Shown: piece by piece, positions 52,100-57,712 of the stretch
Layout of the letters: each line of letters opens with the position of its first letter
Numbering within the stretch: the first letter of the stretch is position 1
NCBI GenBank assembly: GCA_965153285.1
Contig: OZ229115.1
Direction: 5' to 3' (one strand)
DNA length: 64,000 bases
DNA from: Podarcis tiliguerta
Taxonomy: Eukaryota
Program-made: the position numbers and the translations under genes
The notes under the pieces: model-generated
Seen by the model: the letters and a program-made list of their open reading frames with translations, nothing else
Databases searched by the model: none
What the model was told of the DNA's origin: nothing

Positions 52100-52990
52100 A
52101 TTTTGACAGCGACTCCGCTATTGGTTATTACGAGGCGCTTTGGGCGCAGTTCACTGTGTGGGTGGGAAACCAGCATATAAATAAAGGGAACTTTGAAAAG
52201 AAGTCCCACCCGAGGAAAGAAGCCACCTCTTCCTCCCCCGCCCCCGCTCACCGCGCTTGTTCTTGGTGCCGTGTTTGCGGGCCGCCCCCAGCTCCTGCTC
52301 GATCTTCTTCTCCAGGAACTCCTGCTTCTTGCTCAGCATCTCCTCCGTGTCGCGAAGCCGCTGGATGGCCTCCTGGGGGGAAGGCCCCTTGCCGCCGCCC
52401 TTCCCCCCCGTCCCGAACAGCTTGCCCAGCAGCCCCGACATGGCTGGGCCGCAGGCGGAGAAAGCGGCAGCGGAGAAACGGCGGCACCCCGCGACCTCCC
52501 GGTTACGATAGGATCAACCGTGAGGGAGTGAAGCGGGGCCGGCCGAAGACCGCCGGTGCTGAGGTGCTGAGGCAAAACGCCAGGAAAGTGACACCACCTC
52601 CGCCTTCCTCCCGACCGGAGAGGCCCCTCCACCAGCAGCGGCGGCGGCGGCTGTACGGCCTCTCACAGGCCCGAGCCCTCACGGTGACCACTCCCTGACT
52701 GACACACAGATGCCACACACGCAAAGCCCCCGGCACGTCAGCCTCGGCTGCCCCTTGACTGACTCACGGCCTCCCGGTAGGACCGCCCGAGATCTCTCTC
52801 ACGTCACTCCGGGCACCACGGCAACGGCGGCTCCGCCCACAGCCTTCTTCCCCATCCCTCGCTACTCAAGAGGCCGCGAGTATGTAAATAACACGCAAGG
52901 GCTGCCGGTTGCCGTAGTTTTTTCACTCAGAGGATTTCCTCTCGTTCTCTGAGGGTGACGTCACTTGGCGACGCGCGCTCGCACGAGCCT
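52100..52990 (-). promoter_or_regulatory. CHMP4B: CpG-island promoter of CHMP4B
   Basis: Sharp GC/CpG enrichment over exon 1 and upstream; perfect palindromic CRE GTGACGTCAC at 52955-52964; further CACGTCA half-sites near 52734 and 52800. Confidence 0.85.
52252..52441 (-). CDS. CHMP4B: Charged multivesicular body protein 4b (ESCRT-III, Snf7 family), exon 1, 190 bp
   Basis: gccATG Kozak context; MSGLLGKLFGTGGKGGGKGPSPQEAIQRLRDTEEMLSKKQEFLEKKIEQELGAARKHGTKNKR; GTGAG donor; adjacent to ZNF341 as in mammals. Confidence 0.97.
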
Positions 52991-54514
52991 GGGTGTTTTT
53001 TTGTTTTTGTTTTTAACTCTCTCTCTGTGCTCAGTTGAACGCTGGGAGATGTAGTCCTGCCCTCCGCCAAAGCATTAGGAGATGCCCCATACTGGGCCGG
53101 CCCTACCATGAGGGAGAGAGGGGCAGGTGCAGGGAGGGGAGAGCCATAGTTATGAGAGCCATGTGCTGGGGAAGACACTGTCCAGTTCACCAGTATTGTA
53201 GTAAGATTCAACCACCAGTTTGTGGCCTTGGGGAAAGGTGCCACCTCGTCCTTCGCCTCAGGTAGCTGATATCTTGAGCCACCCCTGAGCCCACATGTTG
53301 AACCTTTCGGAGCCTCTAATAGTGACTTGCTTGAATGGTGGGTTTGGATGTGGGCCGATATTAAGTGACCTTGAGCAAGTCAGTTTCTCTTACCTAACCT
53401 ACTTCATGGGGTTGTTGTGGGACTAAAATGCAACTCTCAGCACTTTGGAGGATACACTGTAATAAATGATACAAAGTAATAAATGATAACAGCAGCAGAA
53501 ATAAAACATCATTGTTAAAGATTGTACTTGAAATGCCAGGTGACTCGGGCTCAGGCATGAAGCTTTTCCAAATACAGTACATTTGTTTTTCTGAGGTTCG
53601 TGGTCTGAATTTAGGTAGCCTGGCTATGGCAAAACTTGAAAAATGTAACATCAGTTCTATGGGTGGGTGAGGATGTTGTTTTAGTGAGGATGTTGTTAAT
53701 TGATAAAACTGTTTAGTTAAACTTTCCCTGCTCTCGCCTCTGTCTCTCGCGTTCCTTCTCCAATTCTTCATTAGGCATTGTTGATTACACAGAATTGAGC
53801 AAGAATTGCTCATTATTTTTCTCTGCCCTTCTTCACAATGCAGTCACTAGCTGCCTATACACTTGCATTTCGGTATGTATCCTTTTATATGAGGTTGCTG
53901 CTCATCATATGCTAATTCTAGTAAGTGTATGAGGGAAAGCTCAAATTTTAACTGGACCATGATATTTGTGCAGAACTGCGTCCCTTTTCTAAATACATCA
54001 GAGTCATAGGATGTTTCCGTTAGGAGCATTTATGAATGACATTTCCAAATGGAGAACATAATGGACTTACTCCCAGTACGAAGGATTGTTTGCTTACAGC
54101 TGGAAAGACAAATTGTCCAGATACAGGGTATTGCAAATTTCAGAAAATAATTACAAATGGGGTGCACTACAATTAAAAATAAATAATCAGGTCTTGTATG
54201 TTATTTCAATGTTCTGTATTGTGTTTCTCACTGGATTCAGGAATCATCATAAATTAGGTTAACCAATAAGCATCTTTCAAAGAAAAGCATGCAACCATAC
54301 CTTTCAGTGCTCCGCATGATTAATTCATCTGGATAAGGGAAGGTACTCTCAGTTTTATCAACAAAATTCTTTATGAATGCTGATCACTGCATCATGGCAG
54401 CTGAAACATACACGCACACATACACATTCCATTCATTTCCAATCTTCTGCAGCAGCATATCTCCATCAAACAGCAGAGGAATTATTTCCCCCATTAAGTC
54501 ACAGTACTACTTAG

Positions 54515-55038
54515 TTATTCAGTAGCCTGAATGTAAACAGGGACTGCTAGCATGGCGCATGGGCTCTCCGATCCAGGCTGCAACTCGGCCAGAGCAAGGT
54601 TGGATGGAATGCCACTGCATTGGGTAGGGTTGCCAAGATCAGAGTCTGTTGCTGACACGGCCGTTGATCTGCCAACCACAATGGACAGGACTGTGTCAGA
54701 CACAGGAAACTGTTCTTTATTGGGACCACCTTTCTGAGGGTTTCCTCCATCTGTGCTGTCTTTCAGTTCTGTCAAGGTCAACTGAGCTGAAACAGGAAGC
54801 CCCACTTTCCGCCCACGAGTCCCCCACTTCTTCTGGGATTTTCTGACTGGCAGCTCTTTGTCCTTGGCTGAACTCAGTCTACACTTGTGGTCCTTCATGT
54901 ACTTTTGGCGTGTAAAGCCTTTGCTACATGTAGGGCAGCGGTATTTATAGTTTCCAGTGTGAGAGCGCTGGTGTTCCACCATGTGAGCTCGCCGGCTGAA
55001 GGCCTTGCTGCAGTATTGGCACTTGTGGATCTTCATCC
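54515..55038 (-). CDS. ZNF341: ZNF341 terminal coding exon, 524 bp including TAA
   Basis: GMKIHKCQYCSKAFSRRAHMVEHQRSHTGNYKYRCPTCSKGF...CAMLAVPVYIQATE*; C-terminus characteristic of ZNF341. Confidence 0.95.
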
Positions 55039-55110
55039 CTAAATCAAGAAGAACACAACAGTTGCAAAAGGGCTCATGGACTAGGAACGTAAAGAGAGCC
55101 CTGCCAGGTC

Positions 55111-55264
55111 AGAACAAAGGCCTAGCTAGTCCAGGATCCTGTTTCCCATAAAGAGCCTCAGACATATTCTTGAGCTACACTGTCCCCGCCCTTACCTGCA
55201 GCTGAGAAACAAAAAAACAAAAAAGAACAAAGGCCTAGCTAGTCCAGGATCCTGTTTCCCATAA
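55111..55264. repeat. A-B-A structure: 73-bp copy of 55624-55696 flanked by a 41-bp direct duplication
   Basis: 55111-55151 = 55224-55264; 55151-55223 = 55624-55696 with one mismatch. Confidence 0.95.
55196..55201 (-). CDS. ZNF341: Duplicated copy of the candidate 6-nt microexon
   Basis: Same acceptor-CTGCAG-GTAAG unit inside the 73-bp duplication 55151-55223. Confidence 0.3.
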
Positions 55265-55668
55265 TGGCTAATCAGATTCCAATAACCAGGACAAGAGGAT
55301 GATGGCACCCTTCCACTGTAGATTCCTAGTAACTGCTATATGGCAGAATGGTACCTCTTATCTTGAAAGTTGTACATAGCCATCATGATTGGTAGGCATT
55401 GATAGCCTTATCCTCCATGAAGTTAGCTAATCCCTTTCTAAAGCTATACAAGTTAGTGGCTATCACCAAATTCTGTGGAAGCCACTATGCGTTCTGTGAA
55501 GTAGTTCTTTATGTCTGTCCTGAATATCCCACCATTCAACTTTATCTATCTACTCTTTATACATCAAGCATAATTTTATACACCCTTTATTTCCGCTGCC
55601 TTATTCACCTCTTTTCTAAACTGAAGAGCCTCAGACATATTCTTGAGCTACACTGTTCCCGCCCTTAC

Positions 55669-55674
55669 CTGCAG
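55669..55674 (-). CDS. ZNF341: Candidate 6-nt alternative microexon (CTGCAG; adds Ala-Ala), original copy
   Basis: Minus strand tttttgtttttttgtttctcAG|CTGCAG|GTAAGG, with branch-like CCTAAT upstream; preserves frame in a phase-1 intron; no transcript evidence. Confidence 0.5.
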
Positions 55675-55750
55675 CTGAGAAACAAAAAAACAAAAATATC
55701 ACTGTGGTTCAATAATTAGGTGAGTGAAGAAAATTAAATGAACCTGTTTA

Positions 55751-55885
<135 letters not shown>

Positions 55886-56807
55886 TTATTTAATCAGATG
55901 TTGAATGATACAGATAGGAGTCTCAGATGTAGTTCTGTTTCAGCAGTGTGCAAGTAATGCTGGGTGTTTCTTATGATTTAAAATAGCAGAACAATCACCA
56001 GAGCTTTCTGATCTCCTTGTCATGGTACCAAAAGAAGAAGAAGAAAGCCTGCATAACATTGCAGATCAAATTGACCCGACAACTGAAAAATGCTTTTTGC
56101 TGTTTTTGCCTTTTGCATAGCTTTTGGAAAACTGGACTACTGAAAAAGAAATGCAAGTATTGTGCCAATAAAGAGCTGCAAGTTTATCCTTAATTGAAGA
56201 GTTGGAAGGAACCAAAATGACCCATCAGATCTAACCCTCCATCATCCTGCCAATTCATACCAAATATAAAGCAAATACATTAAAGCTGCATTCTGTTAAG
56301 ATGCCTGTGCAGCCAATGACTCAAGCAAATAAGCCAAACGAGCCACAAAAGGGAGAGGCAAAACCAAGTAAACCCCTTTTTGCTCTAAGCAGAAGTATGG
56401 CTTGCATGATAACAAAGTTCATTGAATTGAGTATGGGCCGGGGGGAGGTTTAACCAGAAGTCTGTGTCTAAGCACCCTATGCAATGTGTGATGATGCCAT
56501 CTAGAAGTGCCTTTAGAATTGCAAGGCACCACAATTGTCTGCCTAGCTCTTTCATTTCTAAACTGCCTTCCAATGAACAATGAAAAGAGAGAATGTGGTT
56601 AATCAGAAGAGGTAACAACTGCACAGAGACAAGATCCCAGAGCCAGTAAAATCAGAAGGCTTTTTCCCCTCCAAAAAGGCTATTCCCTATTCAAAAGGCC
56701 CTATGTTAGCCTATAAACAGAAACTAATCAAAGATGAATTACACTTTACATCTAATGGCTGCAAAGCCAGTGCCATTACTGGCTGCTGTTGAAAACATGA
56801 TACTTAC

Positions 56808-56919
56808 GAGAAGGGGCATTTATATTTCTTGAAAGGCTCATGGATCAGCATATGCCGTTTGAGTTTATCTTTCCTGTTGAAGGCTGAGTCACACACAGAG
56901 CATTTAAAAGGCTTTTCAC
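56808..56919 (-). CDS. ZNF341: ZNF341 exon, 112 bp
   Basis: [37 protein letters not shown](S); phase 1 to 2; GTAAG donor. Confidence 0.94.
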
Positions 56920-57259
56920 CTGTGTAGTACAGAGACATAAACTCAGCAAGGGAGTTGCAGGCTAAGCTTGGCTTACAGATATTCTAATATCCCTTGCTTT
57001 GGCTGAGCTACAGAAAACAGATGCAGCAGAACCAGGCTCTTAAGTTCCCAAAGATCTCTCATCTATTTCTCCCTGTTGGCCACAATCCTTGAGAGTCATA
57101 TGCCTGGATGTTAACTACTGAGAACTGTGTAGGCAGTTGGATGCATTTTAAACAGTTTCAATACTACATCTGGTGTTAACAGAGAAGTCACATTTCTGCA
57201 TAAAACTTGCCTGTTTGTTCATCCAGGTGATCAGTTGCATATACAGTGACCTCCTAACC

Positions 57260-57506
57260 CATGGGTAGGCAAACTAAGGCCCAAGATCCGGATCCAGCCC
57301 AACTGCCTCCTAAATCCGGCCCATGGACAGTCTAGGAATCAGTGTGTTTTTACATAAGTAGAATGTGTGCTTTTATTTAAAATGCATCTCTGGGTTATTT
57401 GTGGGACATAGGAATTCGTTCTTCTTTTTCAAAATATAGTCCAGCCCCCCATAAGGTCTGAGAGACAGTGGACTGGTCCCCTGCTGAAAAAGTTTGCTGA
57501 CCCCAG
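57260..57506. mobile_element. hAT (Charlie-like) MITE, 247 bp
   Basis: CATGGGTAGGCAAACT...AGTTTGCTGACCCCAG imperfect TIRs; perfect 8-bp TSD TCCTAACC. Confidence 0.88.
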
Positions 57507-57712
57507 TCCTAACCAATAGTTGCTGGCTGCAGCTATTCAAACAGCTAAGTGAAATGCAAACAATAAAATAATGACTATAAGGGGAGGGGTCTGAATGACT
57601 TTAAAATAATGGGCTTACATTACGAAGCAGGTTGCTGATCATCACTAGAAATGGTAGCAGCACACCCCAAAGAATGAATGGGTTCAACATGCAGGAAAGC
57701 AGTACTGTGCTA

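What the first reader, a model, noticed from the sequence alone, without database searches (positions are those of the whole stretch)
55660..55740. Hidden 6-nt microexon that would lengthen a ZNF341 zinc-finger linker (WT1 +KTS-like switch)
Seen: 117 nt into the last intron, the sense strand reads ...ctcaCCTAAT...tttttgtttttttgtttctcAG|CTGCAG|GTAAGG. That is a branch-like motif, a long U-rich tract, an acceptor, 6 nt and a near-consensus donor. The intron is phase 1, so inclusion gives TCA G|CT GCA G|GG, changing ...HILSH-SG-MKIHKC to ...HILSH-SAAG-MKIHKC in the linker between the 10th and 11th fingers visible here. Established: short linker insertions (WT1 +KTS) alter C2H2 DNA binding, and ZNF341 controls STAT3 transcription in humans. 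Inference: a regulated microexon may tune ZNF341 binding. Alternatively, the CAG|GTAAG junction could act as a zero-length recursive splice site.
Basis: partly seen in the sequence, partly recalled or inferred. Interest (0 to 1): 0.8.

Follow-up and report, generated by a model that had tools for sequence, protein, structure and literature searches.

The report
Cryptic ZNF341 splice acceptor, not microexon
The six-base "hidden exon" in the last intron of this wall-lizard ZNF341 gene is really in the sequence, but no transcript or protein shows it spliced in; database gene models for Podarcis raffonei use its acceptor only to make a shortened protein.

Summary
Motif counts show that such units occur at the chance rate. 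A 98.6% identical copy lies 473 nt downstream in the same intron.

RNA-like contigs from three runs (two related organisms, three studies) join exon 55792 directly to 55038, with no room for 6 extra bases. All 194 ZNF341 sequences that span this junction, from sharks to mammals and including 70 squamate isoforms, have a 7-residue linker. None has SAAGMK.

The window's exons are 100% identical in protein to Podarcis raffonei ZNF341. RefSeq isoforms X2 and X3 of that species end ...SHSAAAKGGNSVAQEYV and ...SHSAAGKGGDSVAQEYV. These models splice into the acceptor of each copy and then read through GTAAGG to a stop, which removes fingers 11-12.

My reading is a lineage-specific cryptic or alternative 3' splice site that is already annotated, not a conserved linker microexon. 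A rare 6-nt form is not excluded: there were no raw reads and no RNA from this species.

The parts
55792..55862 (-). Penultimate coding exon of ZNF341 (71 nt; ...[22 protein letters not shown] + G of a split Gly codon; second half of finger 10)
   Evidence: RNA-like contigs place joints at 55862/56808 and at 55792/55038. The exon is 100% identical to P. raffonei X1 residues 645-668.
55039..55791 (-). Last intron, 753 nt, phase 1, GT..AG
   Evidence: Joint 'skips 753, CT..AC (cut +1)' in X1, X5 and X8. Sequence.
55675..55698 (-). T-rich pyrimidine tract plus AG: the candidate acceptor (copy B1)
   Evidence: The tail of RefSeq P. raffonei isoform X2 begins right after this AG.
55669..55674 (-). 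CTGCAG: the proposed 6-nt microexon (copy B1). The evidence shows it only as the first 6 nt of a longer read-through exon.
   Evidence: No contig with 6 extra bases. No SAAGMK protein.
55663..55668 (-). GTAAGG donor-like hexamer. The RefSeq models read through it (GGT AAG = Gly-Lys). The G at 55668 is inferred to be C in the RefSeq P. raffonei genome (X2 has Ala, GCT).
55631..55674 (-). Read-through coding stretch of copy B1: (G)CT GCA GGT AAG ... GTC TGA = AAGKGGNSVAQEYV*; stop at 55633-55631
   Evidence: Translate. One residue differs from the X2 tail SAAAKGGNSVAQEYV.
55624..55696 (-). B1: the 73-nt segment that was copied (source copy, in single-copy intron sequence)
   Evidence: Self-BLAST. 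Depth of about 18 in DNA run X22, against 17.7 baseline.
55151..55223 (-). B2: the 73-nt copy (72/73 identical) carrying a second AG|CTGCAG|GTAAGG (CTGCAG = 55201..55196). It sits in the tail of a high-copy repeat.
   Evidence: Contigs of DNA run X22 break at the edges of B1 and B2, as expected for a 2-copy repeat at k=31, so the duplication is not an artefact of this assembly.
55158..55201 (-). Read-through coding stretch of copy B2: AAGKGGDSVAQEYV*; stop at 55160-55158. It matches the tail of RefSeq isoform X3 exactly.
   Evidence: tblastn gives 15/15 identity at 55205-55161.
55224..55264 (-). 41-nt direct repeat flanking B2; the other copy is at 55111-55151
   Evidence: 100% identity over 41 nt.
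55586..55591 (-). The only AATAAA in the intron, 40 nt after the B1 stop. It is a possible poly(A) signal for an alternative last exon. AG|GTGAAT at 55610-55603 could instead close a 66-nt stop-containing cassette.
   Evidence: Function is inferred, not shown.
55702..55703 (-). AG lying between all branch-consensus matches and the candidate acceptor
54515..55038 (-). Last coding exon (GG + MKIHKC...VYIQATE + TAA): fingers 11-12 and the conserved C-terminal tail
   Evidence: Pfam zf-C2H2. 100% identical to P. raffonei X1/X4.

Best explanation
The unit is a lineage-specific cryptic or alternative 3' splice site, not a conserved linker microexon.

A long T-rich tract followed by AG, 117 nt after the exon-14-equivalent donor, can be paired with that donor. 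Transcripts that use it are modelled as carrying on through CTGCAG-GTAAGG for 13 more codons to TGA. The resulting ZNF341 ends after finger 10 with the tail SAAGKGG(N/D)SVAQEYV and lacks fingers 11-12 and the conserved C-terminus. This is what RefSeq annotates as isoforms X2 and X3 in Podarcis raffonei.

The unit was copied, as a 73-nt piece with a 41-nt flanking duplication, into a repeat 473 nt further down the intron. That gives a second such acceptor.

The main mRNA skips both copies and keeps the invariant 7-residue linker SGMKIHK.

Shown here:
- the sequence, phase and duplication;
- the canonical junction in RNA-like contigs;
- the invariant linker in 194 orthologue sequences;
- the exact match of the X3 tail, and the one-residue-off match of the X2 tail, to the two copies.

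Inferred:
- that real reads underlie X2 and X3;
- that these isoforms are minor;
- that they end at the intronic AATAAA or run on into the last exon.
For:: contigs of X1 and X5 (organism A, two studies) and X8 (organism B) each join 55037/38 to 55791/92. Record arithmetic leaves no spare bases: record positions 114-185, 248-319 and 650-720 equal the 71-72 nt of the exon. Depth is 0 over 55604-55770 in all three runs.

all 194 sequences that span the junction have a 7-residue linker, including 70 of 73 squamate isoforms from about 30 species. The only squamate deviants are P. raffonei X2 and X3 and a Rhineura isoform ending SHSGR.

the window's exons are 100% identical to P. raffonei ZNF341.

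the X3 tail is an exact translation of B2. The X2 tail is the translation of B1 with Gly changed to Ala. No other place in the window encodes these tails.

the motif frequency equals chance, so no selection needs to be invoked.

no UGC in the branch-to-acceptor region and no GCAUG in the intron.

the review describes two functional human ZNF341 isoforms, which differ by 7 aa at the end of exon 6, not at this junction.
Against: X2 and X3 are computed (XP_) models, and I could not see the reads behind them.

Short reads from a true 6-nt inclusion could map with a 6-7 nt overhang to both copies and be modelled as read-through. Standard aligners are known to miss microexons (PMC7821500).

The RNA-like runs are contigs, which drop rare variants. 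They come from relatives about 2% diverged from the window, and I did not show that those relatives carry the unit. Their RNA nature is itself a guess of the tool.

CAG|GTAAGG is a near-consensus donor. Once the 117-nt piece is removed, that donor could be used in a second step.
Confidence: 0.55

Rival explanations
1. Pure chance pseudo-exon. Neither acceptor is used in vivo beyond splicing noise, and RefSeq X2 and X3 are annotation artefacts built from pre-mRNA coverage and a few spurious or multi-mapped junction reads.
For: The motif count equals the chance expectation. An AG interrupts the branch-to-acceptor region. There is zero contig depth over B1 in three RNA-like runs. Two near-identical models at two near-identical copies is the pattern that multi-mapping gives.
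Against: An independent pipeline placed exon starts exactly at this AG in both copies. The tract is strong and is transcribed before the canonical acceptor.
Confidence: 0.22
2. A real but young, Podarcis-specific 6-nt microexon. The 117-nt piece is removed first by intron definition. The regenerated CAG|GTAAGG donor is then spliced to the last exon, adding Ala-Ala to the finger 10-11 linker. X2 and X3 would be mis-modelled footprints of these reads.
For: The acceptor and donor are strong and the unit is in frame with no stop. The acceptor is annotated as used. Aligners overlook microexons. Six-nt microexons do exist, for example TAF1 34'.
Against: No contig and no protein shows the insertion. 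There is no UGC or RBFOX enhancer. The linker length is invariant across jawed vertebrates. The RefSeq genome apparently lacks the B1 donor G. A duplicate copy would add a second insertion.
Confidence: 0.15
3. Zero-length recursive splice site. CAG|GTAAGG is used as a ratchet point, so the intron is removed in two steps and leaves no trace in the mRNA.
For: A juxtaposed pyrimidine tract, AG and GTAAG are present. [quoted passage not shown]
Against: The intron is 753 nt. The classical sites lie in introns of hundreds of kb, and in introns under 1 kb conventional lariats predominate, with recursion appearing stochastic. The first AG, 6 nt upstream, is the one the gene models use.
Confidence: 0.05

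Closest known systems
RefSeq Podarcis raffonei ZNF341 isoforms X2 (XP_053249910.1) and X3 (XP_053249912.1)
   Same: Same gene, with exons 100% identical in protein. Their C-terminal tails are the translations of the two copies starting at CTGCAG, so they use the same acceptors.
   Different: They do not use GTAAGG as a donor and are truncations, not linker insertions. X2 has Ala where the window's B1 encodes Gly, which implies a one-base difference at the donor G (55668).
WT1 +/-KTS
   Same: The hypothetical product would insert residues into the linker between two C2H2 fingers, as KTS does between fingers 3 and 4 (PMC11807054; PMC5934627).
   Different: [quoted passage not shown] It is found in all vertebrates, and both forms occur at about 1:1. 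Here no insertion form is seen in 194 sequences or in RNA contigs.
SRRM4-dependent neural microexons, e.g. the 6-nt TAF1 microexon 34'
   Same: Six nt, in frame, adds two residues, preceded by a long pyrimidine tract.
   Different: TAF1 34' depends on two UGC motifs at -18 and -29 from the 3' splice site (PMC6948980). Neural microexons are highly conserved across vertebrates (PMC12871342). Here the nearest upstream UGC is 80 nt away, and there is no sign of conservation at the protein level.
Recursive splice sites / ratchet points
   Same: Pyrimidine tract plus AG abutting GTAAG.
   Different: The classical sites lie in introns of hundreds of kb (Table 1 of PMC10156609). This intron is 753 nt.
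Human ZNF341 isoforms 1 and 2
   Same: Same gene family: a 12-finger transcription factor controlling STAT3 (PMC10620851).
   Different: The two functional human isoforms that this review describes differ by 7 aa at the end of exon 6, not at the last intron.

Membership tests
Conserved (neural-type) microexon | Length 3-27 nt, in frame, no stop | tested here: met
   CTGCAG is 6 nt. A phase-1 intron gives S-A-A-G.
Conserved (neural-type) microexon | Inclusion form present in transcripts | tested here: not met
   Three RNA-like contig sets show only the direct join, with no spare bases. Caveat: these are contigs from related organisms, with no raw reads.
Conserved (neural-type) microexon | The same insertion optionally present in orthologues | tested here: not met
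   0 of 194 junction-spanning ZNF341 sequences have it, including 70 squamate isoforms. The linker is always 7 residues.
Conserved (neural-type) microexon | UGC (SRRM4) motifs between branch point and 3' splice site, or other known enhancers | tested here: not met
   The nearest upstream TGC is at 55756, about 80 nt away. No GCATG occurs in the intron. A sizeable minority of neural microexons (51 of 231 human, 39 of 156 chicken) lack UGC, so this is not decisive.
Conserved (neural-type) microexon | Conservation of the exon and flanking intron DNA across species | not testable with these tools
DNA run X22 is about 98-99% identical overall, too close to inform.
WT1-KTS-like linker switch | Two isoforms differing by a short insertion in a C2H2 linker, both expressed and conserved in vertebrates | tested here: not met
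   Only the 7-residue linker is seen. KTS is in all vertebrates at about 1:1.
WT1-KTS-like linker switch | Made by alternative donor sites of one exon | tested here: not met
   The proposal is a separate cassette 117 nt inside the intron.
Recursive splice site | Pyrimidine tract + AG|GTAAG | tested here: met
   ...tttctcagctgcag|gtaagg.
Recursive splice site | Located in a long intron | tested here: not met
   The intron is 753 nt. Introns with the classical sites run to hundreds of kb.
Recursive splice site | Lariat or saw-tooth evidence of stepwise removal | not testable with these tools
   Only contigs were available.
Alternative 3' splice site / alternative last exon giving a truncated isoform | An annotated product whose sequence equals the translation from the alternative acceptor | tested here: met
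   The X3 tail equals B2 exactly. The X2 tail equals B1 apart from one residue.
Alternative 3' splice site / alternative last exon giving a truncated isoform | Junction reads and a 3' end in RNA | tested here: inconclusive
   No contig lies on B1 in X1, X5 or X8. A depth of 0.85 in the B2 bin of X1 is uninterpretable. AATAAA is present at 55591.

The most novel reading that the evidence does not exclude
This would be a newborn, Podarcis-specific 6-nt microexon made by two-step splicing: the 117-nt piece is removed first, then the regenerated CAG|GTAAGG donor is used. It would add Ala-Ala to an otherwise invariant zinc-finger linker. The unit is already duplicated within the intron and differs at its donor G between this genome and the RefSeq one. 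RefSeq X2 and X3 would then be the mis-modelled footprints of the inclusion reads.
Probability: 0.12. Interest if true: 0.55.

Novelty: already known. Interest (0 to 1): 0.2.

Why it matters
As proposed, the finding would have been a striking way to tune the DNA binding of the STAT3 regulator ZNF341: a conserved WT1-KTS-like switch. The evidence does not bear that out.

What remains is a lineage-specific cryptic acceptor that public gene models already capture as truncated isoforms. This matters mainly as a caution:
- strong-looking AG-N6-GT units arise at the chance rate;
- gene models that end a few codons after a splice junction next to a consensus donor may hide either splicing noise or a mis-aligned microexon.

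If the truncated isoforms are real and abundant, they would yield a ZNF341 without its last two fingers and conserved tail. That could be tested for dominant-negative or loss-of-binding effects.

Tried and rejected
1. Orthologous introns. I tried look-up of encoding contigs on the skink (P0004) and bird (P0009) proteins.

2. Rfam scan of 54900-55950 at E<=1: no hits. The intron holds no known structured RNA.

3. Transposable-element origin of the unit (an antisense A-rich tail giving the T tract): rejected. Self-BLAST finds only the one local copy, and the DNA-run depth over B1 is single-copy. The neighbouring 55262-55542 is high-copy.

4. Literature. No paper links ZNF341 to a microexon in any meaningful way.

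5. Spliced models were to be searched exon by exon by reference, and the junction strings have no reference. I searched the last exon by reference and then used database proteins as queries.

6. The big representative search, structure prediction and the atlas were not used. The protein's identity was not in doubt.

Runs of the window's own organism, and joints into 55674 or 55201, could therefore not be looked at again.

Mammalian ZNF341 proteins returned were only counted in the linker census.

Full report
**The observation**

The gene lies on the minus strand. Six-frame translation shows a chain of C2H2 fingers from about 63.6 kb down to 54.5 kb. A Snf7/CHMP4-like first exon follows at 52.4 kb.

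- The penultimate coding exon is 55862..55792 and ends ...CAT TCA G.
- The last intron is 55791..55039 (753 nt, phase 1).
- The last exon begins GG ATG AAG ATC CAC AAG TGC.
- 117 nt into the intron lies atatttttgtttttttgtttctcAG|CTGCAG|GTAAGGgc. CTGCAG is 55674..55669.
- Inclusion would read TCA GCT GCA GGG = S-A-A-G.

**Is it more than chance?**

It is not, by motif statistics. A stringent scan asked for at least 80% pyrimidines in 19 nt, then AG, 3-27 nt and GTRAG. It finds three units on the two strands of the window, two of which are this unit and its copy. From the window's own counts (90 such acceptors, 205 GTRAG) 3.6 are expected, or 0.02 for this one intron.

The branch-like CCTAAT is followed by an AG at 55703/2 before the tract, and all YTNAY matches lie upstream of that AG. 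The scan's index lists 67 microexon notes for this genome, so look-elsewhere effects are large.

**The duplicate**

A 73-nt piece (B1, 55624-55696) that contains the whole unit recurs at 55151-55223 (B2, 72/73 identical). B2 is flanked by a 41-nt direct repeat at 55111-55151 and 55224-55264.

B2 sits in the tail of a repeat that is high-copy in a DNA run: depth about 1600 over 55270-55436, against 17.7 baseline. B1 is single-copy.

Contigs of that DNA run (X22, another organism) break at 55653/55667 and at 55157/55235. That is where a two-copy repeat breaks a k=31 graph. One contig also crosses the A2|B2 junction. The duplication is therefore real and shared, not an artefact of this assembly.

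**Transcripts**

No listed run is on record as RNA. Eighteen runs are guessed to be RNA and hold 16-25% of the words, which is about the exonic share. I laid X1 and X5 (organism A, two studies), X8 (organism B) and X22 (DNA).

Each of the three RNA-like runs has one contig that joins 55037/38 to 55791/92 ('skips 753'). The record positions between the neighbouring pieces are 114-185, 248-319 and 650-720. Each span equals the 71-72 nt of the exon, so 6 extra bases cannot be present. Depth over 55604-55770 is zero in all three.

There are limits to this evidence:
- these are contigs, which drop rare variants;
- they differ from the window by about 2%, so they come from relatives that I did not show to carry the unit;

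**Orthologues**

I searched the last exon by reference, then a bird fragment. I then searched the C-terminal part of a full-length penguin ZNF341 recovered from a cluster. Finally I listed the members of ten squamate clusters.

Of 260 proteins held, 194 span the finger 10-11 junction up to the next Cys pair, and every one has a 7-residue linker (SGMKIHK, SGMKLHK, SGIKPYK and so on). They range from sharks to mammals. Among 73 squamate sequences from about 30 species, 70 read SGMKIHK. None reads SAAGMK.

The review of human ZNF341 describes two functional isoforms, which differ by 7 residues at the end of exon 6 (PMC10620851).

**The RefSeq isoforms**

The window's exons are 100% identical in protein to Podarcis raffonei ZNF341 X1 and X4. 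Two further RefSeq isoforms of that species share residues 1-666 with X1:
- X2 (XP_053249910.1) ends ...AHILSHSAAAKGGNSVAQEYV.
- X3 (XP_053249912.1) ends ...AHILSHSAAGKGGDSVAQEYV.

Translating the window from just inside CTGCAG gives AGKGGNSVAQEYV* for B1 and AGKGGDSVAQEYV* for B2. No other place in the window encodes these peptides.

So X3 is exon 55792 spliced to the B2 acceptor, and X2 is exon 55792 spliced to the B1 acceptor. Both then run straight through GTAAGG to a TGA. In those models the 'donor' is coding sequence, and the product is a truncation lacking fingers 11-12 and the conserved tail.

X2 has Ala (GCT) where the window's B1 has Gly (GGT). By inference, the RefSeq genome carries C at the very G (55668) that would be the donor's first base. 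The window is therefore another individual, haplotype or sister taxon.

Downstream of the B1 stop lie the only AATAAA of the intron (55591) and an AG|GTGAAT (55610). Either could close the alternative exon. Downstream of B2 there is neither, so an X3-type RNA would simply run on into the last exon.

**Mechanistic reading**

Best-supported reading (0.55): a young, lineage-specific cryptic or alternative 3' splice site. The T tract and AG lie only 117 nt from the upstream donor and are transcribed before the canonical acceptor, so they are sometimes paired with that donor. The modelled outcome is read-through and truncation. The bulk of the mRNA uses the canonical acceptor.

Rivals:
- Nothing is used, and X2 and X3 are artefacts of multi-mapped or spurious junction reads (0.22).
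- The 6-nt form does exist, made in two steps, and X2 and X3 are its mis-modelled footprints (0.15). Standard aligners overlook microexons (PMC7821500).
- Recursive splicing (0.05). In introns under 1 kb conventional lariats predominate, and recursion looks stochastic (PMC10156609).

Several points argue against a regulated neural-type microexon:
- No UGC lies between the branch region and the acceptor. TAF1's 6-nt microexon needs two, at -18 and -29 (PMC6948980).
- No GCAUG occurs in the intron.
- There is no trace of the vertebrate-wide conservation typical of such exons (PMC12871342).

**Comparison with WT1**

KTS is made by alternative donors at the end of exon 9. It is present in all vertebrates, and both forms occur at about 1:1 (PMC11807054). 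None of these three features holds here.

**What could not be done**

- Raw reads of this species were not available.
- An Rfam scan of the intron was blank.

**Verdict**

The sequence observation is confirmed. The microexon and linker-switch interpretation is not supported. The underlying acceptor is real enough to be annotated already, as truncated isoforms. The finding is of low interest unless raw reads reveal the 6-nt form.

Noticed in passing
window 57260-57510 (intron between the exons at 57.7 kb and 56.9 kb): An extremely high-copy repeat. Summed contig depth is about 1,000,000 in DNA run X22 and 40,000-165,000 in the RNA-like runs. There are many internal joints, and loose ends read ATTCCCCCCCCAAAAAAAA. 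It is probably a very abundant, transcribed SINE-like element.
   Followed up: no
window 55262-55542: A high-copy repeat: depth about 1600 against 17.7 baseline in X22, with joints linking 55262 and 55542 to 57260. Its tail (...ggatcctggactagctaggcctttgttctgacctggcagggctctc...) is the target into which the 73-nt copy B2 was inserted.
   Followed up: partly
window 55111-55264: A templated local insertion: 73 nt copied from 473 nt upstream, flanked by a 41-nt direct duplication. On the plus strand the insert ends in an A-rich run.
   Followed up: partly
window 55668: The RefSeq P. raffonei X2 tail has Ala (GCT) where the window encodes Gly (GGT). This is an inferred G/C difference at the first base of the would-be donor, so the window is not base-identical to the RefSeq assembly here.
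   Followed up: partly
window 55751-55790 (first 40 nt of the last intron): Read-through ORFs from bird contigs (P0060, P0062: ...SHSGK..GGWDSLCCCR) resemble the window's read-through ([17 protein letters not shown]). This hints at a conserved intronic element just after the donor, and it contains another CTGCAG.
   Followed up: no
protein P0202 (Rhineura floridana ZNF341 isoform X4, XP_061487634.1): Another squamate isoform truncated at the same junction (...AHILSHSGR, end). Truncation after finger 10 may recur in annotation or in biology.
   Followed up: no
window 52253-52441 (-): First coding exon of a Snf7/CHMP4-type gene (MSGLLGKLFG...; Pfam Snf7 E=1e-5) about 2 kb downstream of the ZNF341 stop, on the same strand. 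It sits in a GC-rich promoter-like stretch.
   Followed up: partly
window 53300-54517 (-): No AATAAA or ATTAAA occurs in the 1.2 kb after the ZNF341 stop codon, although the RNA-like contigs end near 54005-54066. The poly(A) signal must be a variant hexamer.
   Followed up: no
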